From: Okamejei kenojei
Lineage: Eukaryota
Length of the DNA: 64,000 nt
NCBI GenBank assembly: GCA_035221665.1
Contig: CM069131.1
Coordinates: forward strand, 28,396,001-28,460,000
Reading direction: 5' to 3'
Shown here: positions 7,101 through 57,702 of the stretch, one piece after another
How positions within the stretch are numbered: the first letter of the stretch is position 1
Layout: the number at the start of each line of letters is the position of its first letter
Made by a program: the position numbers and the translations under genes
Notes under the pieces: generated by a model
Database searches by the model: none
Told to the model about the DNA's origin: nothing
Seen by the model: the letters and a program-made list of their open reading frames with translations, nothing else

Positions 7101-9138
7101 GGGTATAAGTGTTATAATAGATTCGTTCAATGTATCTGGTAATTTCTCTTGTGTATATATCTGTTCATATAATGATTTTAAATATGGGACCATTTGGTCA
7201 TGAAAAATTTTATAAAATTCCGAGCCTATACCATCGGGTCCTGGAGTTTTACCATTTTTTAAAGATTTAATAGATTCTTGGATTTCTTTTATTGAAATAT
7301 CGGCATTTAATAGTTCTCTATTTTGTAAATCTAATTCTTTTAAGTTACATACATTTAAAAAGGCATCTATTTCTGTTTTATTTACTGTCGTTTTACCAGT
7401 ATACAAATTTTTATAATATTGCATAAATCTTTCATTAATATCCTTGGGCTGTATTAATAATTCACCGTTTTGTGATTTAATCCTATGTATAATTTTTTCA
7501 GCTTCAATTTTCCTTAATTGTCGAGCCAATAGTTTTTGTGGTTTGTCTCCAAATTCAAACAACAATTGTTTAGTATGTTGGTAATATTTTAAAACTTGAT
7601 CAGTATATATTTTATTTAATTTATACTTCAATGCTACAATTTTATTATGTATTATTATATCTGATTTTGTTGCATTCTGTATATCTAATTGTTTAATCTC
7701 CCTTTCTAAGTTGTTGTTCCTTCCGAATCTTTTTATTATGGAATGCTTGTGAAGAAATCATAATTCCTCGAAGATATGCTTTAAATGTTTCCCATAATAA
7801 AGAGCGAGATATTTCTGGTTGATCATTTATTTCAAAAAACATCTTAATCTGAGTTATAATATATTCCTGAGTGGTTTTTATTTTTTAAAATTTGTGGGTT
7901 AAGTTTCCATTGTCCTAGATTTTCTGTTTTACCATTTATTTTAATTTTAAATGTTAATGGCGCATGATCTGAAATTATAATATTATGATATTTGGAATCG
8001 TAAGTAAGTGAAATAAGCTTTGCATCTACCAGAAAGTAATCTATTCTTGAATAAGTTTTATGTACTGGCGAGTAAAAGGAATATTCTCGACCAGTAGGAT
8101 TTTCTGTTCTCCAGACATCTTTAATGTTAGTCGTTTGGATGTATGCGTTTAATAAATCACTAGTATGCGATTTAATTTTTCTTTGTTTTGAAGATCTATC
8201 TAAATAAGGGTCTAATGTACAATTAAAATCTCCTCCAATTATCAAATTGTAATGTGTTAATTCCGGAATATTATTAAGTACTTTCTTAAAAAATAAAGGA
8301 CTATCAAAATTTGGTCCATAGATGTTAACAAAAATCATTTTTTCCCTATTTATTTCTCCTATCACAATAATGTATCTGCCATCTTTATCAGATATAGTAG
8401 ATGTATGCTTAAATAAAGTACCTTTACGAAATAATTGCTACGCCTCTTGATTTATGCGTAAAGGAAGAGTGATATATTTTATCTATCCATTTAGCTTTCA
8501 GCCTATTTTCAGCGTCTTTCTTTAGGTGAGTTTCTTGAATATAAATTACATCAGCTTTCATTGCCTTTAAGTGTGTCAATATTTTTCCTCTTTTTATTGG
8601 TTCATTGATACCTTTAACATTCCAACTGCAAAAGGTTAATCCCTCGTTCCCCATATTTCTTTTTAGATCCTGCATTTTAGGTTTGTGGGAATCTAGAATA
8701 GAGTCCAAGGGTCCGCGCAGTAGACCTAACCTTACACCCGAAACACCGAATAGATGAATTTTAAATCTCTTTTATGTACTTCACGAATATATCTCCATTG
8801 TTCCAGTGTATAGCTCCATTCAAACTGAAAGATATAGTAAGCATAAAAGAATAGTGAAGAGTAGATAAAAAGCTTAATAGAGTGCATAAAGAATGGGAAA
8901 ACTACAAATAAAATATTTGTAGTTTGTGAAAGCCAAACTATATTGGCTATCAATCTAAAGGCTTCCGGCATTGATGTTATTAATTTAGCCAGCTCCTAAT
9001 TTTAAGGAATTATTATTCCATGATAATATTTTAACGGGGATATAATATTAAAGAAATGAAAGGAGTGATATTAGTCATCATAAAAGTATGTATATCTAAA
9101 ATTAATTTAAAAATCTAATTATAAAGCCGCAGATAAAG
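4198..9138 (-). mobile_element. L1 LINE: near-complete but frameshifted ORF2 (~8654-4910), 3' UTR and poly(A); ORF1 absent
   Basis: APE endonuclease SWNVKG/QETH/GDFN/SRIDY/SDHAP; RT KTPGPDG, LDAEKAFD, GCRQGCPLSPLLF, YADD; C-terminal CDKC..H..C; poly-T at 4198. Confidence 0.95.
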
Positions 9139-10614: not shown

Positions 10615-11148
10615 CATTTCAGTTTTGTTTATTGTCACATGTACTGAGGTACAGTGAAAAGCTTTTGTTGTGTGCTATCCAGTCAGCAGGAAGACGAAAC
10701 ATGATCGCAAATGAGCCATTTAAAGTGTCTAGGTACATGATAAGGGAATAATGTTTATTGCAAGGTGAAGCCGATCAAGGATAGTCCAAAGGTCACCAAT
10801 GAGGTAGATAGTAGTTCAGCACTGCTCTCTGGTTGTGATAGGATGATTCAATTGCCTGATAACAGCTGGGAAGAAACAGTCCCTGAATCTGGAGGTGTGC
10901 GTTTCACACTTCCATACCTTTTGCCTGATGGAAGAGGGGAGAAGAGGAAGTGGCCAGGGTGCAACTCATCCTTGGTTATGCTGCTGGCCTTGCCAAGGCA
11001 GCGTGAGGTAGAAATTGAGTCAATAGAGGGAAGGATGGATTGTGTGATGGTGTGAGCTGGGCTCTGTCCACAATTGGCTGCGATTTCTTGCGGTCTTGAA
11101 TGGAGCTGTTCCCAAACCAAGCTGTGATCCATCTGATAAAATGCTTTC
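10615..11148 (-). mobile_element. Rex-Babar LINE 3' fragment with UTR (copies ~19968-20490, ~28480-29010, partial ~34000-34200)
   Basis: ITAWFGNSSIQDRKK, RCLGKASSI.KDELHPGH.LFSPLPSGKRY; AATAAA on the minus strand near 10625. Confidence 0.8.
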
Positions 11149-11686
11149 TTGTCATCACAATTCCCTTTAAGTATTACTGAATGTTTTTAAAATGTGAGAA
11201 TTCTGCTCAATATAATGTCCCTGCCCTCGTTCACCAATAATAGAGTACAGATTGTGGTGGTGACCCCATGAGTTAGCACTCAAACGGTTTTTGATTTCAC
11301 AACACAATTAGAACAGGTTGTTGCACAACATTTCACAACCTGTGTTCATGGGCCATCCCTTCTCATGAGTTTATCTCCATCTTTAATATGTTTATTTGAT
11401 TTCCATTGTCAAATCTTGCATCAAAGCAGACTGTACATTGAATATTATTGTCCTCTCAGGAATTTGCAGTCTTTCAGTAATTATCAGCACTCGGCTCCTT
11501 AGTTCACTCAACGCTACTATCTGGAAAAAAAACCCAAAAATATTTGTGTGTTGACCTATATTATTCCACATAATTAAGTGGAGAGAGTGCATGAAATTAG
11601 CTGTAATTCCGGCCCCATTTACTTTGCATACAGTAGGCTGGTTGGTTACTCCTAGATCCACACAGTTTGCTTCACTGGAGCAATAT

Positions 11687-12922
11687 CTTTTTTTATATAA
11701 TATATATTTATTAGAAGTAAATACAGATTATGATGAAAACATTTCATGTGTATCAATCATACATTATTAATATTATCAATTGAAGATTCATTCTGCTTCT
11801 AATTTTAAATATATATATATGTAGAAACTAAGAAAGAGAGAGAGAGAAAAAAACATAAATGTCAAGATAAAAAAAGAAAGAATGGAATGATTTACTAATA
11901 ATACATCATTGGAGATAGGTTCGAAGATTATGAAGAATAACTTTTCATCTGATCCGGAGTTCAAGTTTCAGTTAGGTTCCTGTGCCGAACCAATCTACCC
12001 CTTCAAATAATCGATGAATGAAGACCATATTTTAACAAAAAGTTCTTGTTTGTCCATTAAGACAAATCTGATTCTTTCCAGGTGTAGGGTCTCTGACATT
12101 TCCATAATCTACATTTTAATTGTGGGGGTTATAGGACCTTTCCAAAATTTTAATATTTATTTCTTCCCAGTTATTATACTGTAGTCTAGAAAGTTTCTTT
12201 GACTTGTTGTGAGTGTTAGACTTTGTTCTCATATTCCAAGTATTATTAGTTTTGAGTCGGGATCCAGTTTAGTGTTAACAACTTCAGAAATTATTCTAAA
12301 AATATCAAACCAGAATTTTTTGATTTTTATACAATTTGCAAAAGTATGTGTTAAGTTAGCCTCTAGATGCTGACATTTACCGCAGATAGGGGAGATATGT
12401 GGGAAAATTCTATTTAATTTTACTTTAGAGTAATGTAATCTGTGTAATACTTTAAATTGTATTAAAGCATGTCTGGCATTTAACGAGCATTGATGTGTAT
12501 GTTGTAGACTTTTGTCCCAAATATCTTTCGTTATAGGTTGACCTAATTCATTTTCCCATGTATGTCTATATGATTCTGTTGATGGGACCTCGCTATCTAA
12601 AAGGGTATTATAAATATAAGTTGTTAATTTTTCTGTATTGGGATGTTTATTCAAATATTCATCAAGGATTTCTGGTTCCCTACTCCTATAATCTTGTGTA
12701 TTGGATTTAACATAATCTCTAAGTTGTAGATATCTAAAAAAATTATTTGAGTCCAGAATTAGTCCATAAATCTGTTGTAACTCCTGAAATAGAAGAAAAG
12801 TGCCTTTCTTATAAAGATGTCCCATCTTTTTAATTCCGTTATTTTTCCATTGTGTGAAACCTTTATGGAAGGTTTGAATAAGGGACTCTTTACAATGGGG
12901 AGACAGTGTGATATATTATCCA
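11687..12922 (-). mobile_element. L1 3' fragment (second subfamily), interrupted by DIRS
   Basis: FFRYLQLRDY..CSLNARHALIQFKVLHRLHY..CGKC..HTF..C; T-run at 11687; empty sites GCAATATCT|TAATC at ~34721 and ~43669. Confidence 0.9.
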
Positions 12923-14536
12923 ATTTTACTTCGGAGTCACGTGAGTGACTACGTGAAGAAGCCCCGCCTGGCGCTTGATCAGCATTACGTCGACGCTGAC
13001 GGTAGAGCAAGAGCTGCAGAGGCAGCTTCTCTACAGCGGTAGGTACGGGCCCGCAGGTAAGTGCAGTTGAAATACTTACAGGGCATATCCAAACTACGTG
13101 GCTGGTGTATAGAGCCACCAGGAGTTAAAAAGAAACGGAATTTAAAAGCAAAAAATAAAATAAAAGTTAAAATGAAAAGAAAATTAATGGAGAAAGACTC
13201 CAAAAATAAAAAAATCAACCAAAGGGTTTAAAAAGGCCCAGAATATTCCCCAAACCAGACCCTGATGGGTTTCCATATATTAATATATATGGTGGAATTT
13301 ATCAATGTGGAAATATCTACCTCGGATTGTTTTGGAGGTAGTCTCCTTGAGGAAAAACTCAGGAGTAACCAGGGCAGTAAAATAATATGAAAAAACTGAC
13401 CCTAAAGGTGCATTGATAGTGGTGGCTGGTCATAAAGTACCCACCACAGCACAAATATATATACAGGTGTACTAGGTACGATACCTGAATGAAGGAGTGA
13501 GGCCATGGAAAGTAACCATGGAAACCAAAATTAATTGGTCTCTCACCAAAGCTGTTATGGTTGAAACAGCAGAGTTATTGGTAAAACTTTTATGTTTTAT
13601 TAAGGTATCAACGGTGAATCCGATTATGGTACCCATGTCTCAATTATATGCGTGGCATCACTACTTATGTAAAACAAATAAAACATTGTGCAATAACCAA
13701 AACATTTTAAATAAAAAAGACAAATTGCCATTAGTTTGNNNNNNNNNNNNNNNNNNNNNNNNNNNNNNNNNNNNNNNNNNNNNNNNNNNNNNNNNNNNNN
13801 NNNNNNNNNNNNNNNNNNNNNNNNNNNNNNNNNNNNNNNNNNNNNNNNNNNNNNNNNNNNNNNNNNNNNNNNNNNNNNNNNNNNNNNNNNNNNNNNNNNN
13901 NNNNNNNNNNNNNNNNNNNNNNNNNNNNCAATTTTGCACTTAAGATTTGCAGGTCAAAACAGATCAAGTTATGTTAAACTCCTGATTATTTATGGAGTAA
14001 ACCTGCCTCAGGATTAATCAAAGACATTGATTACAAAGGAAAGACTATTGGTCATTAAACTTTGACACAATTATGATCCAATGTAAAGATTTGATAATGG
14101 ATCAAACAAAGGCAGGAGTATAATAAATAAATATTTATCCAACACAGCCTTATGTGAACCCATATGATTGGGAAGAGAAGGGGCTTCATGTACATTTGAA
14201 GAGGTGCAAACACTTGTTACAGAAGAAGTTGATGAAATCTCCAATTGTGGGAGATTACAGGTGTGTTATGATCAATGATATGGCATAACAAAGGATTGAT
14301 TTATTTTAATGTGTAAAGGATCTACAAAAAAATTGTAGAAGGAATTGGTTCACCTGTATAGGAAAACCTAAAAAATGATTTTAGGTTTGCACCCAAAATA
14401 TCTCCAATAAAGAAGGGGGTACGTAAATTTGTATAATAAATTTCCCCAGGGAAAAAGAAGATGTGGTGGTAAAGCCATACAAGACATCATTTTAAATACA
14501 CTTTTACAGTGTAAAAACAAATGTACATCTTCCATT

Positions 14537-14725
14537 TTATAGCTATGTTTAAGAGTGAGTTGGATGTGGCCCTTGTGGCTAAGGGGATCAGAGGGTATGG
14601 AGAGAAGGCAGGTACGGGATACTGAGTTGGATGATCAGCCATGATCATATTGAATGGCGGTGCAGGCTCGAAGGGCTGAATGGCCTACTCCTGCACCTAA
14701 TTTCTATGTTTCTATGTTTCTATGT
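14537..14725 (+). mobile_element. Young CR1/HER1-like 3' end inserted in DIRS copy A only
   Basis: Near-identical to 1554-1734 with a (TTTCTATG)3 tail; absent at the homologous site ~23918. Confidence 0.9.
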
Positions 14726-15432
14726 AACATTGAAAAACAATTGTTATTAACAAATTGTTAATCATTACTATAAGACTCGAATGATTGGTATTTAGTACCA
14801 ATTTATTATTATATTTACAGGTGCTTGAAATTAATTAGAATGGGTCAGCTGTGCAAGTTAAGACATTGTCTAATGGATTAAACTCAGTTCTAGGCTGTTC
14901 ACATAATTATTGGAACAACAATTGCACTGATAAGAAGATTAGCACTTGCACTAATGAGGACATGGTCATGGTTCATCTTGATCACATTTTAAATTGGAAG
15001 GTTGATCAGGAGTCAGCTGCAAATTAGTGCAGCAATTACAAGCCTGTTGAGAGGCAAGGTCCCTGACCCATCCAATAAAAACTATGTTTTAGGCATTCAT
15101 AAACATTCCTAAATTACTATTCTGGGTTTAGGAGTAATTCAGCACCATATGAGGGGGAAACATGTTTTCCGAGATACAAATATGTCTCATTGCTTTGTTG
15201 ACAAACTTTCTCCCTCCATCAGAGAAGGAGCTTAGGTAAAAGAGTAAAAAAGCTCCAAAAAAGGGAAAACACAAGCATTATAAGAGTATGCAGGCCATTT
15301 GACAGGCCTATGCAAATACCAAAGGATACGTTATCAGAATTAAAGTGGTGGATAGAAAAGATTCCACAAGCTGCTTTAAACATATTAGCTTAGCAGCCGT
15401 TGCAAGCTGAAGCAAGTATTATCGGATGATGG

Positions 15433-15518
15433 ATAGCTTCTGTGATTATTTGGGTTACGATAAGTAAAATATCTATTCTTATCAAGTTAATATTTGATAC
15501 GTCCCTTGTTTAGGGGAC
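15433..15518 (+). ncRNA. RNU2: U2 snRNA 5'-derived fragment (pseudogenic) embedded in the DIRS RNase H region
   Basis: 15470-15504 TATCTATTCTTATCAAGTTAATATTTGATACGTCC matches U2 TATCTGTTCTTATCAGTTTAATATCTGATACGTCC at 31/35; starts ATAGCTTCT (U2 ATCGCTTCT) and ends with a stem IIb-like GTCCCTT..AGGGGAC. Confidence 0.85.
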
Positions 15519-18500
15519 TACGGACAATAACACCAGGGAATTGCAAATGGATTGTCCTAAGAAATGTTTTCTCCAAACATTTGTATTAATATTGGAGTAT
15601 CAGGAGCTTTTTATGGATTAAATGCCTATTGTTCTACTATGAAAGTGTGCATGTCAAATCAGGTGAACAATACCACAGCTGTGGCATATATCAATCACAT
15701 GAATCAAGTAATATCATTATCAAGTGATTATCTGGGTAACCAGATGTGGCGTATTCTAATAATGTTTTAGTTCAGCTGTTTATCTCTAAGGAAGAGACAA
15801 TGTTGTCGCAGACAACAAATCAGGGGGAAAACATTGTCAGTAATATGGATTACTTGCCATTAATCTGGTTGTATCCAGATTAAATCACCGATTTCTCAAA
15901 TGTTTCTCGTGGGAAAACCGAGAGCAGGAGCGGTGGATGCATTTCGCTAAATTACATGAGGAAAGATGTTCTTTTATATTACTCATTTTGTCTGATAGGG
16001 CAATGTCTGATGAAAATGTAGCAGACGCTGCCAGGGGCACTTTGGTGGCCCAAACCGGACCTTCATGGTTCTCATTAATGTTGAGAGTGATGTTTGAACC
16101 AGTTATGATGACTCGTAGTTGCAGTAATATGTTGTTGTACAAATTCATCCATGGCAGGAAGATATGAATTTGGCTATCTGTAGGTTTGACCAGACCATTA
16201 TAACAGTTTGACGGTCAAAGAGGTCTATGAATGTTTTAACTAATATAAAATATAACAATTATGTACAAAAGGAATGTTATACCTGCAATTTGGAGAAATA
16301 GTTTAAAAAACAATATTTTGTTTATAAGAAATTGGAAGTCTTTCGCAGACAGTAAAAGTTATTTTATCATATTAGATATATGGGAGTTCCTTGTGGATTG
16401 CATTTTTTCTCAGCATCTAAGTGATAGAGCCAATAATAGGGCTCATAGTGTTTATCGTCCTATTTAGGACAAATTGCTGACCAAGAATTTATCGGGCCCA
16501 TTCGTAATATCCCNNNNNNNNNNNNNNNNNNNNNNNNNNNNNNNNNNNNNNNNNNNNNNNNNNNNNNNNNNNNNNNNNNNNNNNNNNNNNNNNNNNNNNN
16601 NNNNNNNNNNNNNNNNNNNNNNNNNNNNNNNNNNNNNNNNNNNNNNNNNNNNNNNNNAGTTGGGAGATCAGCATAGTCCTGACTTGCCTTAGGCAATGGA
16701 CTCCAATTCTATCAATGATTCAAAAATTTAACATTGAAAGTAATAATGTTCATGACTTTAGTATCAGCATAAGAGTGCAAACATTGCAAATGTTACATTA
16801 TATAATTGCATGTGGCTACAGCTTACATTATCTTATATGTTTATGAATTTACCAAACAAGGCAGACCAAGAAGAGCTGGAACCAAGGTAAAATTTAAGCA
16901 TATCCTGTCGGCCATTCTGCAACTCCAGCATTTTGTGTCTATCTTCGACAGAAACAGGCAAATCAGCATACCATGTCCCTGATATCCAGTACTCATCTAT
17001 ATTAATGCCATTTACTAGTACTTTGTCTGTAACCTTCTATGCATTGGCTCATCCAGAAGCTTCTATAATGTTGTGAGAAACTTATCCACACCACCCACCG
17101 TGGTAAAATGTGTTAAACATTTGTAACATCTTCTGTGTGACTAAGGTTTTCCTCAGCTTTGCTCTAACCGCTTATCTCTTACTCACAATTTACTCTATCT
17201 TATCCCCTCCACAAGTCCAAGGTAGTGCAAGAAGTGGTCTTTATTCTGCTGCCGAGGTAGGATTAGAGTTGTTCAGGTCAGTTCAAGAACCTGACGATGT
17301 AAGAGAGTAATATTCCTGAACCTGGTGTTGCGGGACTTCAGGCTTCTGGACCTCCTGCCTGACAGTAGCAGCAATAAGAGGGCATGGCCGAGATGGCCGG
17401 GATCTTTGATGTTAGGCAACACCTCATGCAGATGCGTTCGATGGAAGGGGGGGGGGGGGGGGGTGGGTTTGTACCTGTCATGGACGGCAACTCTTTCATT
17501 CCTTACGATAGAATTGGCATACCAGGCCATGATGCGACCAATCACTATACTTTCTACAGTGTTTCTGTGGAATTGTGTTGGAGTATTTGGTGACGTGCCA
17601 GATCTCTTTAAACTTTGAAAAAAGTAGGGTTGTTGGCACTTCATGATTCCATCTACGTGCTGGGCCCAGGACACGTTATCTGAGATATTAACACCCAGGA
17701 ATTTGTGCAATGTCTTATAACTATCAGGATTCAATTCCATTTGAAATTCAATCTGATATGCTAGCAACAGTTATTCTGCTGCCTTTAATTCTATGACAAT
17801 CCATTGCCCAGCAAATATAACACACCTTGATCTGAAAGATCAAGGCCAAACTTGTATATTCCTTGGATGAGATGTGTCAGTCTTCTAAGCTATTACAAGT
17901 GTTATTTTTAACAGACCTTTTATACTATTAATAGGAACATATAGCGCTGATGGAAAGTTGAGGACGAATGTGCCTCAGGCAGCTTGGCGACAGAACTTAT
18001 AAAGTAAAACAGTTGGCTTGGTCTTTCCTTAAAATTCATTCATACCATTTAAAGTTTTGTTTCCAGTAACTTTTCATTCAATGAATTGCAGATCACAACC
18101 AGTTCATCTTTTAAAAAAATGTTTCCTCATGCTTCACATTCTTTTCCCAGTGATCTGATCATGTATGATTTTGACTCATGGAAGCACAAGGAGGTCTTAA
18201 AGCCTCTTCATCCTTCCCCATTATTCAATGAGCATCCTGCACTCCAAGGAACAAAGTCCCAACCTCCTTACAGCTCAGGCCCCTCAGTCCCAGCAACATC
18301 CTCACTCATCTTCTCTGTACTCTCCATCCAGCCCAATGACATCCCTGTGACCAAGACTGAACACAGCACTCCAAATGTGGCCCCACAACGTCCTGTACAA
18401 CTAAATACCCTGAACGCCAAGGGCCAATGTAGAACAAGCCCCCTCCATCATCCTACCCACCTATGACACAACCTCCAGGGAACCATGCACCAGCACCCCT

Positions 18501-21023
18501 ACATCCCTTACTCCATCACGGCCCCAGGGCCCACATACACCATGAAGGTCCCATCTCAACCCGACCTCCCAAAATCCCAAAACACCCCTCAGCCATCTGC
18601 ACCAAACTCCATCAGCTATTCCTCAGCCCACTTACCTAGCTGACCAAGATCCCACTGCAATCGTTGACAACCATCTTCACTGTTCACAATACCACCTATA
18701 TTAGTATCATCTGCAAACTGCACGCTAAAACTGTCAATAGTTTATCAAACATATTTTCTTTTGCAATAAATTAGCTGCTGAAGGAACTCCCAGCATCTGT
18801 GGGATGGAGGGGAGTAGTGATCGATGATTCTAACCAGTAGCGTCTAGGACCAGGGGTCATAGCCTCAGAATAAAATGACGTTTCTTTAGGAAGTAGATAA
18901 GGAGGAATTTCTTTTGTCAGAGGGTGGTGAATCTGTGAAATTCATTGCCACAGAAGGCTGTGGAGGCCAGGTCAATGGATATGTTTAAGGCAGAGATAGA
19001 CAGATTCTTGATTAATATGTATGACAGGGGTTATGGGGGCAAGGCAGGAGAATGGGGTTGAGGGGGAGAGATAGGTCAATTCTCATTAACCTCCTCTGGA
19101 CCCTCTCCAACACCAGCACATCCTTCTTCAGATATGCGGCACAAAACTGTTCACAATAATCCAAAGGCAGTCTGACCAGTGCTTTATAAAGCCTCAGCAT
19201 TGCATCCCTGTTTTTGTATTCTAATCCTCTTGAAATAAATGCTAACATTGCATTTGCCTTTCTTACTACTGATTCTCCAATTTCTCAATATAACTAATGT
19301 ATAAATACAAGGATACCATCTATCCTTGTGCACTATTCCAAACTTGCCCTGCCAGAGACTTTGTGTGATCCCTCCTTCAGCCCTGCCTCCTACTGTAATG
19401 TCACTACTTCAGTTACAGTATGTTGCCCCTCTTCATATTTCAGTCCATGAGATTTCACTCTCCATGTGTCTGCTCACTTCACCAGCCTGTCTCTGATTCT
19501 TGTCCCTCCCACAGTTTACACTATTATATGTTTCCGTGTAGTCTGACAAACCAACCCTTCACCCAACTCTGTGCCTTGTCATCGCGTTAAATATACATAC
19601 AAACTGATTGTCCGTGTCACAAGAGACACAATGTTGTTAATGATGCAGTGATAGTGCACTGAAAAGGCGCTTGTCCTATCGTATCTCTGTCGGCTCTGTG
19701 AACGTCCATCTATACATCAATCGTACAACCCTCAGCAACTCTTTTTGTTAAATTATCCAAGATCTCAATCAAGCAAAGGCCAGCATTTATTTCCACCTCT
19801 AACTACCCTTGATCCACTGTTTGATGGAGATATTCCCAAGATAGTGGAGGGTCGGGGGTTCTAATATTTAGACCCCGTGATGATGAATAAAGATTGAGTA
19901 ATGTGGGATGCAATATAATTCAGCTGCAGCTTCTGAAGGCCCACAAAGACTTCCCCAAGACCCTCCTCAGTTCAGTTTTGTTTATTGTCACATGTACTGA
20001 GGTACAGTGAAAAGCTTTTGTTGTGTGCTATCCAGTCAGCAGGAAGACGAAACATGATTGCAAATGAGCCATTTAAAGTGTCTAGGTACATGATAAGGGA
20101 ATAATGTTTATTGCAAGGTGAAGCTGATCAAGGATAGTCCAAGGATCACCAATGAGGTAGATAGTAGTTCAGCACTGCTCTCTGGTTGTGGTAGGATGAT
20201 TCAATTGCCTGATAACAGCTGGGAAGAAACAGTCCCTGAATCTGGAGGTGTGCGTTTCACACTTCTATACCTTTTGCCTGATCGAAGAGGGAGTGGCCAG
20301 GGTGCAACTCATCCTTGATTATGCTGCTGGCCTTGCCAAGGCAGCGTGAGGTAGAAATGGAGTCAATAGAGGGAAGGATGGATTGTGTGATGGTGTGAGC
20401 TGGGCTCTGTCCACAATTGGCTGCAATTTCTTGCGGTCTTGAATGGAGCTGTTCCCAAACCAAGCTGTGATCCATCTGATAAAATGCTTTCTTGTCATCA
20501 CAATTCCCTTTAAGTATTACTGAATGTTTTTAAAATGTGAGAATTCTGCTCAATATAATGTCCCTGCCCTCATTCACCAATAATAGAGTACAGATTGTGG
20601 TGGTGACCCCATGAGTAAGCACTCAAACGGTTTTTGATTTCACAACACAATTAGAACGTTGCACATCATTTCACAACCTGTGTTCATGGCCCATCCCTTC
20701 TCATGAGTTTATCTCCATCTTTAATATGTTTATTTGATTTCCATTGTCAAATCTTGCATCACAGCAGACTGTACATTGAATATTATTGTCCTCTCAGGAA
20801 TTTGCAGTTTTTCAGTAATTATCAGCACTCGGCTCCTTAGTTCACTCAACGCTACTATCTGGAAAAAACCCAAAAAATATTTGTGTGTTGACCTATATTA
20901 TTCCACATAATTAAGTGGAGAGAGTGCATGAAATTAGCTGTAATCCCGGCCCCATTTACTTTGCATACAGTAGGCTGGTTGGTTACTCCTGGATCCACAC
21001 AGTTTGCTTCACTGGAGCAATAT

Positions 21024-22258
21024 CTTTTTTTATATAATATATATATTAGAAGTAAATACAGATTATGATGAAAACATTTCATGTGTATCAATCATACATT
21101 ATTAATATTATCAATTGAAGATTCATTCTGCTTCTAATTTTAAAAATATATATATGTAGAAACTAAGAAAGAGAGAGAGAAAAAAAAACATAAATGTCAA
21201 GCTAAAAAAAGAAAGAATGGAATGATTTACTAATAATACATCATTGGAGATAGGTTCGAAGATTATGAAGAATAACTTTTCATCTGATCCGGAGTTCAAG
21301 TTTCAGTTAGGTTCCTGTGCCGAACCAATCTACCCCTTCAAATAATCGATGAATGAAGACCATATTTTAACAAAAAGTTCTTGTTTGTCCATTAAGACAA
21401 ATCTGATTCTTTCCAGGTGTAGGGTCTCTGACATTTCCATAATCTACATTTTAATTGTGGGGGTTATAGGACCTTTCCAAAATTTTAATATTTATTTCTT
21501 CCCAGTTATTATACTGTAGTCTAGAAAGTTTCTTTGACTTGTTGTGAGTGTTAGACTTTGTTCTCATATTCCAAGTATTATTAGTTTTGAGTCGGGATCC
21601 AGTTTAGTGTTAACAACTTCAGAAATTATTCTAAAAATATCAAACCAGAAATTTTTGATTTTTATACAATTTGCAAAATTATGTGTTAAGTTAGCCTCTA
21701 GATGCTGACATTTATCGCAGATAGGGGAGATATGTGGGAAAATTCTATTTAATTTTACTTTAGAGTAATGTAATCTGTGTAATACTTTAAATTGTATTAA
21801 AGCATGTCTGGCATTTAACGAGCATTGATGTGTATGTTGTAGACTTTTGTCCCAAATATCTTTCGTTATAGGTTGACCTAATTCACTTTTCCCATGTATG
21901 TCTATATGATTCTGTTGATGGGACCTCGCTATCTAAAAGGGTATTATAAATATAAGTTGTTAATTTTTCTGTATTGGGATGTTTATTCAAATATTCATCA
22001 AGGATTTCTGGTTCCCTACTCCTATAATCTTGTGTATTGGATTTAACATAATCTCTAAGTTGTAGATATCTAAAAAAATTATTTGAGTCCAGAATTAGTC
22101 CATAAATCTGTTGTAACTCCTGAAATAGAAGAAAAGTGCCTTTCTTATAAAGATGTCCCATCTTTTTAATTCCGTTATTTTTCCATTGTGTGAAACCTTT
22201 ATGGAAGGTTTGAATAAGGGACTCTTTACAATGGGGAGACAGTGTGATATATTATCCA
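21024..22258 (-). mobile_element. L1 3' fragment, duplicate of 11687-12922
   Basis: Near-identical sequence and the same DIRS junction. Confidence 0.9.
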
Positions 22259-25200
22259 ATTTTACTTCGGAGTCACGTGAGTGACTACGTGAAGAAGCCC
22301 CGCCTGGCGCTTGATCGGCATTACGTCGACGCTGACGGTAGAGCAAGAGCTGCAGAGGCAGCTCCTCTACAGCGGTAGGTATGGGCCCGCAGGTAAGTGC
22401 AGTTGAAATACTTACAGGGCATATCCAAACTACGTGGCTGGTGTATAGAGCCACCAGGAGTTAAAAAGAAACGGAATTTAAAAGCAAAAAATAAAATAAA
22501 AGTTAAAATGAAAAGAAAATTAATGGAGAAAGACTCCAAAAATAAAAAAATCAACCAAAGGGTTTAAAAAGGCCCAGAATATTCCCCAAAACAGACCCTG
22601 AGGGGTTTCCATATATTAATATATATGGTGGAATTTATCAATGTGGAAATATCTACCTCGGATTGTTTTGGTGGTAGTCTCCTTGAGGAAAAACTCAGGA
22701 GTAACCAGGGCAGTAAAATAATATGAAAAAACTGACCCTAAAGGTGCATTGATAGTGGTGGCTGGTCATAAAGTACCCACCACAGCACAAATATATATAC
22801 AGGTGTACTAGGTACGATACCTGAATGAAGGAGTGAGGCCATGGAAAGTAACCATGGAAACCAAAATTAATTGGTCTCTCACCAAAGCTGTTATGGTTGA
22901 AACAGCAGAGTTATTGGTAAAACTTTTATGTTTTTATTAAGGTATCAACGGTGAATCCGATTATGGTACCCATGTCTCAATTATATGCGTGGCATCACTA
23001 CTTATGTAAAACAAATATAAACATTGTGCAATAACCAAAACATTTTAAATAAAAAAGACAAATTGCCATTAGTTTGNNNNNNNNNNNNNNNNNNNNNNNN
23101 NNNNNNNNNNNNNNNNNNNNNNNNNNNNNNNNNNNNNNNNNNNNNNNNNNNNNNNNNNNNNNNNNNNNNNNNNNNNNNNNNNNNNNNNNNNNNNNNNNNN
23201 NNNNNNNNNNNNNNNNNNNNNNNNNNNNNNNNNNNNNNNNNNNNNNNNNNNNNNNNNNNNNNNNNNNNNNNNNNNNNNNNNNNNNNNNNNNNNNNNNNNN
23301 NNNNNNNCAATTTTGCACTTAAGATTTGCAGGTCAAAACAGATCAAGTTATGTTAAACTCCTGATTATTTATGGAGTAAACCTGCCTCAGGATTAATCAA
23401 AGACATTGATTACAAAGGAAAGACTATTGGTCATTAAACTTTGACACAATTATGATCCAATGTAAAGATTTGATAATGGATCAAACAAAGGCAGCAGTAT
23501 GATAAATAAATATTTATCCAACACAGCCTTATGTGAACCCATATGATTGGGAAGAGAAGGGGCTTCATGTACATTTGAAGAGGTGCAAAAACTTGTTACA
23601 GAAGAAGTTGATGAAATCTCCAATTGTGGGAGATTACAGGTGTGTTATGATCAATGATATGGCATAACAAAGGATTGATTTATTTTAATGTGTAAAGGAT
23701 CTACAAAAAAATTGTAGAAGGAATTGGTTCACCTGTATAGGAAAACCTAAAAAATGATTTTAGGTTTGCACCCAAAATATCTCCAATAAAGAAGGGGTAC
23801 GTAAATTTGTATAATAAATTTCCCCAGGGAAAAAGAAGATGTGGTGGTAAAGCCATACAAGACATCATTTTAAATACACTTTTACAGTGTAAAAACATTT
23901 TATTAAAATGGACATCTTCAACATTGAAAAACAATTGTTATTAACAAATTGTTAATCATTACTATAAGACTCGAATGATTGGTATTTAGTACCAATTTAT
24001 TATTATATTTACAGGTGCTTGAAATTAATTAGAATGGGTCAGCTGTGCAAGTTAAGACATTGTCTAATGGATTAAACTCAGTTCTAGGCTGTTCACATAA
24101 TTATTGGAACAACAATTGCACTGATAAGAAGATTAGCACTTGCACTAATGAGGACATGGTCATGGTTCATCTTGATCACATTTTAAATTGGAAGGTTGAT
24201 CAGGAGTCAGCTGCAAATTAGTGCAGCAATTACAAGCCTGTTGAGAGGCAAGGTCCCTGACCCATCCAATAAAAACTATGTTTTAGGCATTCATAAACAT
24301 TCCTAAATTACTATTCTGGGTTTAGGAGTAATTCAGCACCATATGAGGGGGAAAACATGTTTTCCGAGATACAAATATGTCTCATTGCTTTGTTGACAAA
24401 CTTTCTCCCTCCATCAGAGAAGGAGCTTAGGTAAAAGAGTAAAAAAGCTCCAAAAAAGGGAAAACACAAGCATTATAAGAGTATGCAGGCCATTTGACAG
24501 GCCTATGCAAATACCAAAGGATACGTTATCAGAATTAAAGTGGTGGATAGAAAAGATTCCACAAGCTGCTTTAAACATATTAGCTTAGCAGCCGTTGCAA
24601 GCTGAAGCAAGTATTATCGGATGATGGATAGCTTCTGTGATTATTTGGGTTACGATAAGTAAAATATCTATTCTTATCAAGTTAATATTTGATACGTCCC
24701 TTGTTTAGGGGACTACGGACAATAACACCAGGGAATTGCAAATGGATTGTCCTAAGAAATGTTTTCTCCAAACATTTGTATTAATATTGGAGTATCAGGA
24801 GCTTTTTATGGATTAAATGCCTATTGTTCTACTATGAAAGTGTGCATGTCAAATCAGGTGAACAATACCACAGCTGTGGCATATATCAATCACATGAATC
24901 AAGTAATATCATTATCAAGTGATTATCTGGGTAACCAGATGTGGCGTATTCTAATAATGTTTTAGTTCAGCTGTTTATCTCTAAGGAAGAGACAATGTTG
25001 TCGCAGACAACAAATCAGGGGGAAAACATTGTCAGTAATATGGATTACTTACCATTAATCTGGTTGTATCCAGATTAAATCACTGATTTCTCAAATGTTT
25101 CTCGTGGGAAAACCGAGAGCAGGAGCGGTGGATGCATTTCGCTAAATTACATGAGGAAAGATGTTCTTTTATATTACTCATTTTGTCTGATAGGGCAATG

Positions 25201-43689: not shown

Positions 43690-44035
43690 TAGCAATAGAC
43701 AATAGACAATAGGTGCAGGAGTAGGCCATTTGGCCCTTCGAGCCAGCACCGACATTCAATGTGATCATGGCTGATCATCCCAAATCAGTACCCTGTCCCT
43801 GCCTTCTCCCCATATCCTCTGACTCTGCTATTTTTAAGAGCCTTATCTAGCTCTCTCTTGAAAGCATCCAGAAAACTTGCCTCCACCGCCCTCTGAGGCA
43901 GAGAATTCCACAGACTCACCACTCTCTGTGAGAAAAAGTGTTTCCTCGTCTCCGTTCTAAATGGCTTACTCCTTATTCTTAAACTGTGGCCCCTGGTTCT
44001 GGACTCCCCCAACATCGGGGACATGTTTCCTGCCT
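43690..44035 (-). mobile_element. CR1/HER1-like 3' end
   Basis: PMLGESRTRGHSLRI..WNSLPQRAVEA; (CAATAGA)n tail; empty site at ~34736. Confidence 0.88.
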
Positions 44036-52413: not shown

Positions 52414-54844
52414 TAACTGTTAAACTCTTTAGTGTCCTTATTAATACGTGTTTTTTTTTACTTGTTTGTTTTTTCAGCCCCTATTACTGTCACCATGCTT
52501 TACATCTCACTTCATCTGTGGGTCTCCACTGCTTCCTGCACTGTTTAGAGCCAAAACCGGATTTTTTTATGAAGAAAAATCATTGCAAGCTATCCAGTTG
52601 TGGTTGGATGAATGTCTGATTTTACTTCGGAGTCACGTGAGTGACTACGTGAAGAACCCGCCTGGCGCTGGCAAACGGCATTACGTCGACGCTGACGGCA
52701 GAAGCAGGAGCTGCACAGACAGCTCCTCGACAGCGGTAGGTTCGGACCGGCAGGTAAGTGCAGTGAAAAAATATTAGGACTGGGAAAAAACTCCGTGCCT
52801 GGTGGAAACCAGGGTTTTAAAGGTTTAAATAACAAAATAAAGTTTAAACTGAATTGAAATACTCTGTTTAAACAACGGAGTTTGAATAGAACGTCCCGGG
52901 GAAAGAATACCCAGTGATCAGGACGAGAGATTAATTACGGGGCCGGTTCCGATACTGGTACCGTTTAAAATACCATAGAGAGGTTAAAATGCTCCACAAT
53001 TTTGGCAGGATATTTTAAAAGTCAGAAAGACTGTATTTTAAAAAAGTTAATAAAATTTTGAATATACAAAAGACTAGGGTCACAGTACCCAAACAGTTCC
53101 CCAAAAAAGACCCTGAGGGGCTTGAATATACAAAATATGGCTATGTGCCAAATTGAGAAATAAAAACTCTGACCCTGGATAGGGTGGAGGAAGTCTCTTT
53201 GGATATAATTCCAAGTGGATCGGGGCTGCAAAAGACAGACCCTGCAAGTGGTGATGTGAATTATGAATGCACACCACAAATAAAATAAAAATAAAAGTGA
53301 GGCCAGGTGTGCCTGAGATAGCAAAAGATTTTGCTATATCTAAAGGAAGTGGTGAGGCTATGGAAAAAACCTAGCTGCCTACATTAATTATATGGTACCT
53401 CACCAACTTCAAGAATACGATAAAACTTTTATGTTTTATTTAAATATCAATGGTTAATCCATTTATAAATATCCATGTCTCAAATAATATGAGATATAAG
53501 AAATACAATTTCAAAGTTTCAAAATGGTGCAAATAAGTGATACTTTCAATATAAAATAAATTGCCATTAGTTGTGGAGCTTAATAGGAAGAAATATATAT
53601 AATTTACCGAATCTGCATCATAGGGTTGCAGATTAATACAAATCAGGATATATTAAACTCCTGATTATTATAGAATACCTGCCTTATGATAAATCAAAGA
53701 CATTAATTACAAAAGAACAGACTACTGATCTTTAAACTTTGGGAAGGAAAACTATGATCCAATAAAAAATGTTGATTATGGATCAAAACAAAGACAAAGA
53801 TCTTTTATCTTATGGTGAAAAAACTATGATCCAATGAAAGATTTGATAATGGATCAAAATAAAGGCAGAAGTGGTATTATCCAAACATAGCCTTATCTTA
53901 ACCTATATAATTGGGGAAAAGAAGGCTTGATGTACGTTGAAGAGGTGCAAACATCTGGTTACAAAATAAGTCATGAAATCTCCAATTATGGGGGATTACA
54001 GGTGTATTATGATTGTTAAAACTTAATATAACTAAGGAAGGATTGGTTCACCTGTATAAGGAAAAAACTGATTTCAGGTTTGCACTCAAAAGTAAATTTT
54101 AAAAAAGAAGGGGAACGTACATGTATATTATAAAATTACCTTAGTGTAAAGATTCATGGTATAAACCATACAATAATATCATTATTTACACTTTCACAGT
54201 GTAAGAAAATAGAAACATCTAGAACATGGAAAGCTGTTGTGATTAACAAAGTGTTAATCAATATTACAGGTGCTTGAAATTAATTAAAGTGGGTCAAGCT
54301 GTGCAAGTTAAAACTTGTCCAAACAATCAATCAGTTCAAGTCTGTTAAAACTGAACACTGAAGGAACAATATACTGATAAAAGATCAGCACTTGCACTAA
54401 TGAGGTCATAGTATGGGTTATCTCGATTACATTTAAATTAGAAGAGATAAGAGCAGCTGCAAATTAGTGCCTGCCATTACAAACCTGGTGGAAGGTAGGA
54501 CCTGACCCATTACATAAAGCATATGCTTAGGCATTAATAAAATATTTTTAAATTACTATTCTGAATTCAGAAGTAATTTAAGCACCATAAGAGTGGGGAA
54601 AATTGTTCCATGATACAAATATGTATTATTGTTGTTGACATACTTTGTTCCTCCATTAGGTTAGGGAAAATATAAATAAAGTTCCAAAAGAAGGAATACA
54701 GAAGCTTATAAGAATATGTATGCCTTGTGAAGAGGCTTATGCAAAATATCAAATGATACGTTATCATTATTAGTAATGTAAAAAAAGGTTCATAAGCTGC
54801 TTCAACTATAAAATTACAACTGAAGCAAGGGTTACAGATCATGT

Positions 54845-54924
54845 ACAGCTTCTGTGAATGTTTGGGTAAAGATAAGAATATTATCTATTCTTATAACAAT
54901 AATTGATATGTCTTTTGTTCGGAC
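54845..54924 (+). ncRNA. RNU2: More decayed U2-derived fragment at the same RNase H position
   Basis: ACAGCTTCT..TTTGGGTAAAGATAAG..TATCTATTCTTAT..TTGATATGTC..GGAC, homologous to 15433-15518. Confidence 0.65.
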
Positions 54925-56192
54925 TGCAGACAATTATACCAGGCGAACATAAATGGTTTGTCCTAAGAAATTTTCCAAACATTCGTATTAATTGTTGAAG
55001 TATAAGGAGTTATGGATTAAAAAGATCGATTGTTTTATTATGGAACTGTCCATGTCGTATCAAGATGAAACAATACCACGGCTGTGACATATGTTAACTA
55101 TGGTCAAATTTGGGAGGAAAATATATTGTCATTATTTTGCATACTTACGATTAATCTGGTTGTATACAGATTAAATCACTGATTTTTAAATATTTCTTGT
55201 GGGTCACAAGATAAGTCAAATAACAATTATGGGATTATCTAAGTAAAACAGATGTGGCATGTTTTAAAGTTTAGTCCCACCTGTTTATCTCTAAGGAAGA
55301 GACAATGGTATCGGAAGATAACAAATTTGGGAAGAAAAACATATTGTCATTAATATGGATTATTTACGATTAATCTGATTGCATACAGATTAAATCACCG
55401 ATCTTTCGAATATTCTTGTGGGTAATCTAAGAACAGTGAAGGTGGATGCTTTTCTCCCAATTACATGAGGAAAAGATTTCTTTGTGTTCCTCATTTTTGT
55501 TTAATAGGGCAGTGTCTGATGAATATGTAGCGGGACACTGCCAGAGGCATTTTGGTGGCCTAATATGGGTCCTTTATGGTTTCATTTATATTGTGTGATT
55601 TTGAACTGCTAGTGATGATTCATAGTGGCAGCAATTTATTGAAGTCAAAAAAGGGGTCTCGACCTAGGTCGTTGCCTGTCTCCCTTTGCTCTTTGGATGC
55701 TGCTGCACCCACTGGGATCTCCAGGTTGAGAAACCCTGCAGTAATTTATTGTTGTACAAAAAACCTCCATAAGTGAAAATATGAATTTGACTATCTACAG
55801 GTTGACCAGACCATCTCAACAGCTGATGGTCAAAGAAGTCTATGAATGTAAACCAATATTACAATATATCAATAAAATAATTATGTATAAAGAAGTGTTA
55901 TACCTGCAATTTGCGGAAATAAGTCTAAATAACTATATTTTGTTATAAGAAATTGGAGGTCTGTATATACAGTAAGTTATTTTGTCATTTAGATATATGT
56001 GAATTCCTTGTGGATTGCATTTTCTAAGTATCTAATTGATAGAGCCAATAATAGGGCTCAGAGTGTTACCGTCTTATAAACGGACAATATATTAACCAAG
56101 AAGTTATCAGATGCATTCATAATATCCCATTATGGAAAGGGATATATATGTAAATGTTAATAAATATATATATATATGTGTGTGTGTGTATA

Positions 56193-56223
<31 letters not shown>

Positions 56224-57122
56224 AGATATGTGTATATGTATATATAATCTGTCCAAAATTGTAAAAAATATAAAGGCAGGAGATAAAAATCTTGAAATGC
56301 CTTAAGAAATGGACTTTAACTCTATCTATGATTCAAAAAACTTAAACATTGAAAATAATAATTCTGATAACTTTAGTATCAATATAAGAGTGCAAACATT
56401 GCAAATGTTACGTTATAATGGCATGTGGATACAAATTGCATTATCATATATGTTTATGAATCTACCAAACAAAGCACACCAAGAAGACCTGAAAACGAAA
56501 CCAAGGTAAACCTATAAGCATATCCTGCTGGCTTTAAGTTGTGTGTGTGTGTGTGTGTGTGTGTGTGAACATTGATGAAAATGTTGCAGTAGGTAAGAGT
56601 CTGTGGCAATGAGACTGCTTATTACACACAAAAACCACAGTGGGTTCAGTAAAACTGATGGTTATAGAGGAATGTATTTCTAGATGGTTAAAAAATTGGA
56701 TACATTCAGTAGGAACTAGACACTGAAAGGTGGAAAATCACTCTGTTAATGAGGAAAATACATTCACAAGAATGGCACAGGATGAGCCACTCAAGCAAAG
56801 ATGCAAGGCCGCAGGAGGCTGTAGATTACTGTTAAAATAAAGGAACCAGTCATGGTGTCAGATTTAGACACGCAATGTTCGGTTCGCTATAATTGTTGCT
56901 TTGTCATGCCATAAAAAATATATATATCTATTGGTATTTGTGATAAATTTGCTTTTCAATGGAAAGGGCATTATTTTCATTTTTTATAATGTGAAAATTA
57001 TTTATCACATAACTTGAGGCAATGTTTGGGGGAAAATGTGTTATTCGCTCGTTATTGTTTAATGAGCCGTTCTGTCGTATGGAATAAATTCTACGACACG
57101 AAAAACACAGAAAGCTTTAAAC

Positions 57123-57236
57123 TCTTCACGTAGTCACTCACGTGACTCCGAAGTAAAATAGTAAGATTAAACGAGAACTTACCAGTTCGAAGTTTGATCG
57201 TTTATTTTATGAGGAGTTACGATGAGGGATTACGTG
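57123..57236. repeat. DIRS internal complementary region (ICR)
   Basis: TCTTCACGTAGTCACTCACGTGACTCCGAAGTAAAA is the reverse complement of the left end, fused to TAGTAAGATTAAACGAGAACTT..., the reverse complement of the right end. Confidence 0.92.
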
Positions 57237-57702
57237 CCCTCCACTCCCCACCCTCATAAAATAAATGATCATCTGGTAGTTCTAAGTCTATTATGAGCCT
57301 TACTATGTTACTTCGGCTATTTTGTGTTCTGTGTTTTTCATGCCGCTGCTTTGAAGTATGCCGTTTGCCAGCGCCAGGCGGGTTCTTCATGTAATCCCTC
57401 ATCGTAACTCCTCATAAAATAACGATCAAACTTCATAAAAGTTCTCGTTTAATCTTACTAATTTATTTCAGTTGCGTTCTTGATTTTTTAAACTCCCCAA
57501 TCAAAGGCAGTAGATCCAGCATCTGGTTTCTGTCTGAAGCTACGTCTTAACATGGAACCGAAAATAATATGAAGCTAATTAAAGGAACAAATTCAAAAAA
57601 CAGGCGAAATACTTTGGTCTTTCATTTTGTTTGAGCACTCTGATCAGACTAAGTGGAGAGCCACAAGACAAAAGGAAGATCATAGAAGGTGAAGCTCCAG
57701 TT

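What the first reader, a model, noticed from the sequence alone, without database searches (positions are those of the whole stretch)
15433..15518. DIRS retrotransposon carrying a captured U2 snRNA 5' domain inside its RNase H region
Seen: directly after the RNase H DAS..GW-type relic (LQAEASIIG) and before the ..NTTAVAYINH relic lies an 86-nt segment that aligns to U2 from its first nucleotide to the end of stem IIb (core 31/35 identical). Stem IIa shows a paired change (U2 TATCAG/CTGATA -> TATCAA/TTGATA) and stem IIb still pairs (GTCCCTT/AGGGGAC), although the surrounding DIRS coding sequence is wrecked. The branch-point recognition GTAGTA is altered and the Sm site and 3' half are absent. 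Known: U2 is targeted by Keno/Utopia LINEs and gave rise to SINEU. I do not know of U2 as internal cargo of DIRS elements. Inference: capture by RT template switching, then propagation and possibly structural selection in a non-autonomous lineage (for example an RNP decoy, or a localisation or stability module).
Basis: partly seen in the sequence, partly recalled or inferred. Interest (0 to 1): 0.88.

Follow-up and report, generated by a model that had tools for sequence, protein, structure and literature searches.

The report
U2 snRNA fragment riding a DIRS retrotransposon
An 86-base copy of the front end of the spliceosomal U2 RNA sits inside the dead RNase H gene of a many-copy DIRS-type retrotransposon family and has spread with it, most likely as a passenger with no function.

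Summary
Window 15433-15518 (+) matches Rfam U2 from model position 1 to the end of stem IIb. It scores 37.1 bits (E 4.5e-6 locally, 7e-4 for the whole window), below the gathering score of 46. It lies between DIRS RNase H relics. The TDAS-to-ADxLSR spacing is 408 nt, against 330 nt in published DIRS1-like elements, so about 80 nt are extra.

The segment is not private to this copy. There is an identical copy at 24628, which is only a tandem segmental duplicate. A homologous, decayed copy lies at 54845-54924 in an independently inserted element about 25% diverged. Contigs from two species gave 883 and 1933 matching pieces, with even depth across the segment and no form lacking it. So an ancestral element acquired the fragment, probably through RNA, and the family then amplified.

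Structural selection is not supported. Identity between copies A and C in the segment (76%) is ordinary for the element. Copy C has lost stems IIa and IIb. One compensatory pair is within chance. No target-site duplication or poly(A) was found, so template switching is slightly favoured over retropseudogene insertion. No RNA evidence was obtained.

This is a new variant of known snRNA capture and of modest interest. The scan also noted this feature on another piece of this genome (s1-880622).

The parts
15433..15518 (+). U2 snRNA-derived segment, copy A (U2 nt 1 to the 3' foot of stem IIb). The right edge is uncertain by about 10 nt (15518-15528).
   Evidence: Rfam U2 37.1 bits, model starts at position 1. 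The fold keeps stems IIa and IIb.
24628..24713 (+). Copy B, 100% identical. It belongs to a 9.35-kb tandem segmental duplication, so it is not an independent insertion.
   Evidence: blastn (10648-20000 against 20001-29015, 98-99.8% identity); cmscan.
54845..54924 (+). Copy C, the homologous U2-derived segment in a diverged DIRS copy. Two 3-nt deletions break stems IIa and IIb.
   Evidence: Alignment A1. No U2 covariance-model hit. Fold z about 0. Identity to copy A is 81%, or 76% counting gaps.
15400..15432 (+). RNase H relic LQAEASIIG*W, equivalent to xxTDAS..GWG. It has a stop at 15427-15429.
   Evidence: Translation; motif list of Piednoel 2011, table S3.
15519..15700 (+). RNase H relic downstream of the insert, from ..GIANGLS*E..CINIGVSGAFYGLNAY to NNTTAVAYINH. 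It has stops at 15528 and 15558; the one at 15558 is shared with copy C.
15808..15825 (+). ADNKSG relic of the ADxLSR motif at the end of RNase H. It lies 408 nt after the TDAS motif start, against a canonical 330 nt.
14774..14985 (+). Reverse-transcriptase relics DSNDWY (for DLKDAY, at 14774) and HLDH (for YLDD, at 14974).
   Evidence: Stop-free pieces; motif order and spacing compared.
15970..16059 (+). Methyltransferase-domain relics SFIL (for AFPP, at 15970) and QTG (for PxW, at 16051). They are 81 nt apart, against a canonical 78 nt.
12923..16907 (+). DIRS1-like element copy A. The left terminal repeat is 12923-13072. The element is interrupted by two N runs and by a 206-nt repeat insertion at 14520-14725. 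The 3' end is missing.
   Evidence: blastn against copy C. No inverted repeat partner was found.
52619..57469 (+). DIRS1-like element copy C, with inverted terminal repeats and an internal complementary region.
   Evidence: 52619-52655 against 57123-57159 is 100% complementary, and 52638-52681 against 57358-57401 is 93% complementary. The flanks are unrelated to those of copy A.

Best explanation
The first 86 or so nucleotides of a U2 snRNA molecule were copied, through RNA, into the RNase H-coding region of a DIRS1-like retrotransposon in an ancestor of the present family. The fragment runs from the capped 5' end to the foot of stem IIb. The most likely route is two template switches of a reverse transcriptase during cDNA synthesis: from DIRS RNA onto U2 just 3' of stem IIb, run-off at the U2 5' end, then back to DIRS RNA. 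The lineage carrying the fragment has no open pol frame in the copies seen. It presumably moves using proteins supplied by autonomous DIRS elements, and it became a many-copy family in at least two related species. The U2 piece is passenger sequence. It has no promoter of its own (U2 promoters lie upstream of the gene), no Sm site and a mutated branch-point recognition sequence, and it decays at the same rate as the rest of the element's interior. Shown here: U2 origin, extra length, presence in independent copies and across the family, and no excess conservation. Inferred: the RNA route, template switching and trans-mobilisation.
For: U2 origin: 37.1 bits starting at model position 1, E 7e-4 for the whole window. 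At 15455 and 15458 the family-majority letters restore the GGCuaaGAU stretch of the U2 consensus. The segment spans the Keno/Utopia target site (TGTAGTATCTGTTCTT) intact, so it does not come from a LINE-interrupted U2 gene.

Extra sequence: the TDAS-to-ADxLSR spacing is 408 nt, against a median of 330 nt in 27 DIRS1-like elements. All seven vertebrate elements in that table have 330-332 nt. The neighbouring intervals in copy A are shorter than canonical, not longer.

Propagation: copy C has the segment at the same place with the same edges, inside an element with its own ITR/ICR and unrelated flanks. Contigs of organisms A and B gave 883 and 1933 laid pieces across all likeness classes. Summed depth over the U2 bins is like the flanks, and no joint skips 15433-15518. 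The scan noted a further copy on another piece of this genome.

Passenger status: A-to-C identity in the segment is 75.6%, and 35% of the 86-column windows along the element are at least as conserved. Copy C has lost the fold.

Route: the 5' edge is exactly U2 nt 1, there is no poly(A), and the flanking direct repeat matches only 6-7 of 10, which is within chance.
Against: No intact DIRS pol sequence could be fetched to align across the site. Every protein search with the decayed pieces came back empty, so the 'insertion' rests on motif spacing taken from a published table. One fungal element in that table has a 425-nt spacing, so longer RNase H regions do occur. Template switching was not separated from retropseudogene insertion. 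The reading-frame argument (86 = 3n+2 joins the two frames in copy A) is weakened because copy A lacks one T after 15589 that copy C and most family contigs have. Logan contigs of repeats are short, so rare empty copies could be missed. No RNA run was available. In copy A and the family majority, stems IIa and IIb have no broken pair. They show one compensatory change judged against Rfam, and perhaps two judged against my recollection of vertebrate U2. A crude count makes that mildly unlikely under neutrality.
Confidence: 0.7

Rival explanations
1. A LINE machinery retroposed a tailless, 3'-truncated U2 retropseudogene into a genomic DIRS master copy, and that copy then amplified. The passenger outcome is the same; only the entry route differs.
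For: This class of snRNA retrocopy is well known: it is 3'-truncated at varied positions, has an exact 5' end and is flanked by target-site duplications (review text). L1/Tx1-like LINEs with long ORFs lie in this window. Earlier scan notes report snRNA-headed Tx1 elements in this genome (unchecked). A weak direct repeat lies at the edges: ATCGGATGAT / TACGGACAAT in copy A and TACAGATCAT / TGCAGACAAT in copy C.
Against: The repeat matches only 6 of 10 in copy A and 7 of 10 in copy C. Even 8 of 10 occurs in about 5% of random window positions. A 10-12-nt duplication plus 86 nt would give 96-98 extra nt, against the 78 observed.
Confidence: 0.2
2. The U2 5' domain is a functional RNA module of this non-autonomous DIRS family, for example for RNP binding, nuclear retention or RNA stability, and is kept by selection in master copies.
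For: Every detectable family member carries it. Copy A folds into stems IIa and IIb, z -4.0. The G-C pair of stem IIa has changed on both sides to A-U. There are few common variants inside the two stems.
Against: Conservation is no higher than elsewhere in the element. Copy C has broken stems, and a second variant seen in X6 loose ends appears to have a broken stem IIa. C-to-T and A-to-G changes keep wobble pairs automatically. The branch-point site is mutated and the Sm site is absent. One compensatory pair among about 20 pairs is about what chance gives. The changes may already have been in the source U2 variant.
Confidence: 0.06
3. A U2-derived SINE-like retroposon with a target preference for this DIRS sequence inserted independently into many copies, as SINEU-3 does in Mariner-N4_AMi.
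For: There is a precedent in crocodilians. Earlier scan notes report snRNA-headed Tx1 elements in this genome (unchecked).
Against: There is no poly(A) or LINE-derived tail. Copies A and C have identical edges and share derived letters. No empty sites appear among thousands of contig pieces, and depth over the segment is not higher than over the flanks. Divergence of the segment equals that of the flanks.
Confidence: 0.03
4. The resemblance to U2 is chance, or the stretch is native DIRS coding sequence.
For: The score is below the Rfam gathering threshold. One DIRS element in the published table has a long RNase H region.
Against: E is 7e-4 across the whole window and all 4227 families. The match starts exactly at model position 1. 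The family-majority letters are closer to U2. There are 78 extra nt relative to 26 of 27 reference elements.
Confidence: 0.02

Closest known systems
Tailless, 3'-truncated snRNA retropseudogenes (Van Arsdell 1981 class; reviewed in Kojima 2015, PMC4494074)
   Same: RNA-derived copy of U2 that starts exactly at nt 1, is truncated at the 3' end and has no poly(A).
   Different: There is no significant target-site duplication here. The copy lies inside a retrotransposon and has been multiplied with it to many copies instead of remaining a single dead locus.
SINEU and snRNA-headed Tx1 elements (Kojima 2015, PMC4494074)
   Same: U2-derived sequence that became part of a mobile element, probably by template switching, and was then amplified.
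   Different: In SINEU and Tx1 the snRNA piece is the 5' head of a LINE-dependent element with a poly(A) tail. Here it is internal, in the middle of pol, in a tyrosine-recombinase (DIRS) element with no LINE-type tail. SINEU was reported only in crocodilians.
L1-mediated chimeric retrocopies such as U6-L1 and snRNA-Alu (Buzdin 2002; Garcia-Perez 2007, as cited in PMC4494074)
   Same: A reverse transcriptase switches template onto a small nuclear RNA and runs to its 5' end.
   Different: Those are single switches that give a 5' snRNA joined to a 3' LINE or mRNA, as dead-end insertions. This case needs two switches, or an insertion, and the product stayed mobile.
DIRS1-like retrotransposons (Piednoel 2011, PMC3266345; Malicki 2020, PMC7192593)
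   Same: Motif order RT-RH-MT, and inverted terminal repeats with an internal complementary region.
   Different: All ORFs are decayed. The TDAS-ADxLSR interval is 78 nt longer because of the U2 piece, and the neighbouring intervals are 50-65 nt shorter.
Keno/Utopia LINEs that target U2 genes (PMC4640811)
   Same: An association between U2 sequence and a retroelement.
   Different: Those elements insert into U2 at TGTAGTATCTGTTCTT. Here U2 sequence lies within the element, and that site is uninterrupted.

Membership tests
U2 snRNA gene (Rfam RF00004) | Score at or above the Rfam gathering threshold (46 bits) | tested here: not met
   37.1 bits.
U2 snRNA gene (Rfam RF00004) | Full length, with Sm site and stems III and IV | tested here: not met
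   Model positions from about 89 to 185 are deleted in the alignment.
U2 snRNA gene (Rfam RF00004) | Intact branch-point recognition sequence GUAGUA | tested here: not met
   It reads AAAAUA in copy A. Other family copies also differ from GUAGUA.
U2-derived sequence (fragment) | Significant similarity in sequence and structure to the U2 5' domain, starting at nt 1 | tested here: met
   E 4.5e-6 locally and 7.2e-4 for the window; stems IIa and IIb fold.
Tailless 3'-truncated snRNA retropseudogene | Flanking target-site duplication | tested here: inconclusive
   The best direct repeat matches 6 of 10 in copy A and 7 of 10 in copy C, which is within chance.
SINEU-type snRNA-headed SINE | snRNA head at the 5' end of an element with a 3' body and a poly(A) tail | tested here: not met
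   DIRS sequence resumes right after the segment, with no A-run and no LINE-like tail.
SINEU-type snRNA-headed SINE | Independent insertions, with empty target sites present | tested here: not met
   No joint skips the segment in 883 + 1933 + 69 laid contig pieces.
DIRS1-like retrotransposon | pol motifs in the order DLKDAY - YLDD - TDAS - ADxLSR - xFPP - PxW | tested here: met
   Relics DSNDWY 14774, HLDH 14974, LQAEAS 15400, ADNKSG 15808, SFIL 15970 and QTG 16051 against the table. They were read by eye. There is no profile support, because the pieces are too decayed.
DIRS1-like retrotransposon | Inverted terminal repeats plus an internal complementary region | tested here: met
   Met in copy C. 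Copy A has only the left repeat.
DIRS1-like retrotransposon | Tyrosine recombinase ORF with the HSTR-type motif | tested here: inconclusive
   No Pfam hit on downstream pieces. The region is partly under an N run in copy A. Only a recombinase N-terminal-like relic was seen by eye at 16249-16464.
DIRS1-like retrotransposon | Statistical homology of the encoded protein to DIRS pol | tested here: not met
   phmmer against 1.84 billion representatives gave 0 hits. The word-indexed search gave 0 candidates.

The most novel reading that the evidence does not exclude
The U2 5' domain is not a mere passenger but a selected RNA module that helped this coding-dead DIRS family succeed. It might do so by recruiting U2 snRNP or Sm-independent nuclear factors, by stabilising or retaining the transcript, or by helping it to be picked up by the proteins of an autonomous DIRS. 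In support: it is present in every detectable family member in at least two species, and the family-majority sequence keeps stems IIa and IIb with compensatory change.
Probability: 0.06. Interest if true: 0.7.

Novelty: new variant of a known kind. Interest (0 to 1): 0.35.

Why it matters
snRNA fragments are known as retropseudogenes, as heads of SINEU and Tx1 elements, and in L1 chimeras. I found no report of one carried inside a tyrosine-recombinase (DIRS) retrotransposon. If the template-switch route is right, it shows that DIRS reverse transcription can pick up abundant nuclear RNAs and that such a chimera can remain mobile in trans. In practice the segment is a clean diagnostic marker for this DIRS subfamily and its age across related species. 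It also warns that sub-threshold U2 hits in this genome are mostly DIRS interiors, not U2 pseudogene loci. It does not bear on splicing biology unless the functional reading proves true.

Tried and rejected
- **Protein homology for the DIRS call.** Pfam on 11 stop-free pieces gave nothing. phmmer of the 107-aa MT-region piece against 1.84 billion representatives gave 0 hits. The search for homologous proteins with the 69-aa RNase H piece found no candidates. So no intact DIRS pol could be aligned across the site, and motif spacing from a published table was used instead.
- **More copies from metagenomes.** Two pattern scans, one for the DIRS-U2 junction and one for the family-specific U2 stretch, gave 0 hits.
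- **Raw reads.** Run X21 (organism F) laid nothing, so there are no true depths or strand data. X6, listed as possible RNA, is probably DNA. There is therefore no expression evidence.
- **Target-site duplication.** A candidate was examined and found to be within chance.
- **Reading frame.** Removing 86 nt joins the frames in copy A. I do not rely on this, because copy A has a private 1-nt deletion at 15589/90 and the T-run at 15561-15575 varies among copies.
- **Extension of U2 homology to AAATGGATT (15546-15554).** I considered this and rejected it in favour of the DIRS G.WS relic. It would leave too little RNase H sequence.
- **Origin from a Keno/Utopia-interrupted U2 gene.** Rejected, because the segment crosses that target site intact.
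- **A 17-nt similarity between 15442-15458 and 15724-15740 (15 of 17, E 0.7).** Treated as chance.
- **Consensus or mended element.** I built none on purpose.

Full report
**Observation.** The stretch 15433-15518 on the + strand is U2-like. The default Rfam scan of the window reports nothing at gathering thresholds. A permissive scan places RF00004 (U2) at 15433-15535 with 37.1 bits. E is 4.5e-6 for a 401-nt search and 7.2e-4 for the whole window against all 4227 families. The alignment starts at model position 1 (AUAGCUUC...). It runs through the stem I region, an altered branch-point recognition site, stem IIa and stem IIb. It then skips model positions from about 89 to 185, so the Sm site and the 3' half are absent. 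The conserved CAG/CUG pair of stem IIa reads CAA/UUG. Folded alone, copy A forms stems IIa and IIb: the 43-nt piece gives -14.2 kcal/mol with z -4.0, and the 86-nt piece gives z -2.1.

**Surroundings.** The + strand from about 12.9 to 16.9 kb is a decayed DIRS1-like retrotransposon. Stop-free pieces and frame translations show these relics in the canonical order:
- DSNDWY (for DLKDAY) at 14774
- HLDH (for YLDD) at 14974
- LQAEAS (for xxTDAS) at 15400
- NNTTAVAYINH at 15666
- ADNKSG (for ADxLSR) at 15808
- SFIL (for AFPP) at 15970
- QTG (for PxW) at 16051

These are the pol motifs tabulated for 28 DIRS1-like elements by Piednoel et al. 2011 (PMC3266345, additional file 3). The related copy C (52619-57469) has the DIRS terminal architecture. 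Its left end 52619-52655 is 100% complementary to an internal region at 57123-57159, and 52638-52681 is 93% complementary to 57358-57401. Profile and homology searches with the decayed pieces gave nothing. The DIRS assignment therefore rests on motif order, spacing and terminal repeats.

**Is the U2 piece extra sequence?** In the published table, the distance from the start of the TDAS motif to the start of the ADxLSR motif has a median of 330 nt. It is 327-342 nt in 25 of 27 elements, with outliers at 258 and 425. All seven vertebrate elements have 330-332 nt. In copy A the distance is 408 nt, so 78 nt are extra. All of the excess lies between the DAS and NNTTAV relics. The neighbouring intervals are shorter than canonical: YLDD to TDAS is 426 against about 490, and ADxLSR to AFPP is 162 against about 216. 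The excess is therefore not general inflation. In copy A, removing exactly 15433-15518 (86 = 3n+2) brings the codons that start at 15400 into register with those that start at 15519. I do not lean on this argument. Copy A lacks one T after 15589 that copy C and most family contigs have, and the T-run at 15561-15575 varies among copies. No copy examined has an open RNase H frame. The stop at 15558-15560 is shared by copies A and C.

**Copies.**
- **Copy B.** The window holds an identical copy at 24628-24713, but it belongs to a 9.35-kb tandem segmental duplication of 98-99.8% identity. It is not an independent event.
- **Copy C.** A third copy at 54845-54924 lies in element C. Element C is 60-88% identical to A block by block, starts at the same terminal repeat and has unrelated flanks, so it is an independent insertion. 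It carries the U2-derived stretch at the same position with the same edges.
- **Family level.** Logan contigs of two species laid 883 and 1933 pieces on 15150-15850 at 80% likeness or more, spread over all likeness classes. Summed depth over the U2 bins is like the DIRS flanks: X1 gives 17.5-23k against 16-53k, and X13 gives 127-214k against 67-246k. Only two single-contig joints were listed, neither skipping 15433-15518, so no 'empty' family member was seen.
- **Majority letters.** At 15455, 15458 and 15467 most copies differ from copy A. At 15455 and 15458 their letters restore the GGCuaaGAU stretch of the U2 consensus.
A scan note records another such copy on a different piece of this genome (s1-880622; not checked by me).

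The segment therefore entered one ancestral element and was multiplied with it.

**Route of entry.** The left edge coincides with U2 nt 1, which points to an RNA template rather than recombination with a U2 gene (inference). The segment spans the Keno/Utopia target site in U2 (TGTAGTATCTGTTCTT; PMC4640811) without interruption. It therefore does not derive from the head of a LINE-interrupted U2 gene. There is no A-run or LINE-like tail. The best flanking direct repeat matches 6 of 10 in copy A and 7 of 10 in copy C. Even 8 of 10 is seen at about 5% of random positions. This slightly favours two template switches during reverse transcription over LINE-mediated insertion of a tailless, 3'-truncated U2 retropseudogene, a known class (PMC4494074). 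The two routes are not resolved.

**Selection.** The identity of copies A and C within the segment is 81% ungapped, or 75.6% with gaps. The adjacent 86 nt give the same values. Of all 86-column windows along the element, 35% are at least as conserved. The terminal repeat and the 16.3-16.9 kb region are the conserved parts. Copy C has 3-nt deletions in both stems and folds no better than shuffles. A further variant seen as loose ends in X6 appears to have both partners of a stem IIa pair changed to a non-pair. One compensatory pair among about 20 is near the chance expectation, and C-to-T changes keep G-U pairs automatically. The changes could also have been present in the source U2 variant, which I could not examine. 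The fragment lacks a promoter, because U2 promoters lie upstream of the gene (established knowledge). It also lacks the Sm site and an intact branch-point site. I conclude that it is passenger sequence. A functional RNA module is not excluded, but I give it about 6%.

**Comparison and novelty.** The closest known phenomena are tailless snRNA retropseudogenes, SINEU and snRNA-headed Tx1 elements, and L1 template-switch chimeras (PMC4494074). This case differs in three ways: the carrier is a tyrosine-recombinase retroelement, the position is internal, and the chimera stayed mobile and became abundant. Full-text searches found no report linking DIRS and U2 cargo. It is a new variant of a known kind. 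It is useful as a subfamily marker and as a caution for snRNA pseudogene annotation. Its interest is modest unless function is shown.

**Limits.** No reference DIRS protein, no raw reads from the host and no RNA data were available. Contigs of repeats are short, so rare empty copies could be missed. The host's U2 gene was not seen. 

Noticed in passing
window 10648-20000 vs 20001-29015: A tandem segmental duplication with a period of about 9.35 kb and 98-99.8% identity. It contains DIRS copy A/B and could also be an assembly duplication. Copy A has 206 nt (14520-14725) where copy B has 22 nt (23898-23919).
   Followed up: partly
window 14542-14724; also 1554-1736, 60954-61132 (-), 43695-43822 (-), 47877-48043, 33950-33996 (-): A repeat of about 180 nt ending in (ATGTTTCT)n, up to 99% identical between copies. 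It is inserted in DIRS copy A but not in its duplicate B, so it looks like a recently active SINE or a LINE 3'-tail family. From memory its sequence resembles elements of cartilaginous fishes.
   Followed up: partly
window 50105-50264: A long near-perfect hairpin. It matches several plant miRNA-precursor models on both strands, all below threshold (MIR8670 74 bits against a gathering score of 150). It is probably a palindromic repeat or MITE, not a miRNA.
   Followed up: no
window 55106-55204 vs 55324-55423: DIRS copy C carries an internal direct duplication of about 218 nt covering the end of RNase H and the start of the MT region (84% identity between units).
   Followed up: partly
window 15667-15701: The DNTTAVAYIN-coding block has the highest contig depth. 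Loose ends there continue into other, less decayed DIRS families (for example ...GGTGGAATTAGGTCA, which reads GGIRS). Several DIRS families therefore coexist in these species.
   Followed up: no
window 4910-8365 (-) and 30171-31985 (-): L1/Tx1-like LINE copies with long open frames (endonuclease 173 aa, RT 488 aa, C-terminal 376 aa). They are candidates for the reverse transcriptase behind snRNA retrocopies in this genome.
   Followed up: no
window 51268-51693 (-): A Tc1/mariner-type transposase fragment (141-aa ORF).
   Followed up: no
window 12923-13072 vs 52619-52768; 16257-16461; 16708-16871: Between DIRS copies A and C, the terminal repeat and two downstream interior blocks are 86-90% identical, while the rest of the interior is 60-77%. 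This fits selection on cis-acting parts in a non-autonomous lineage.
   Followed up: partly
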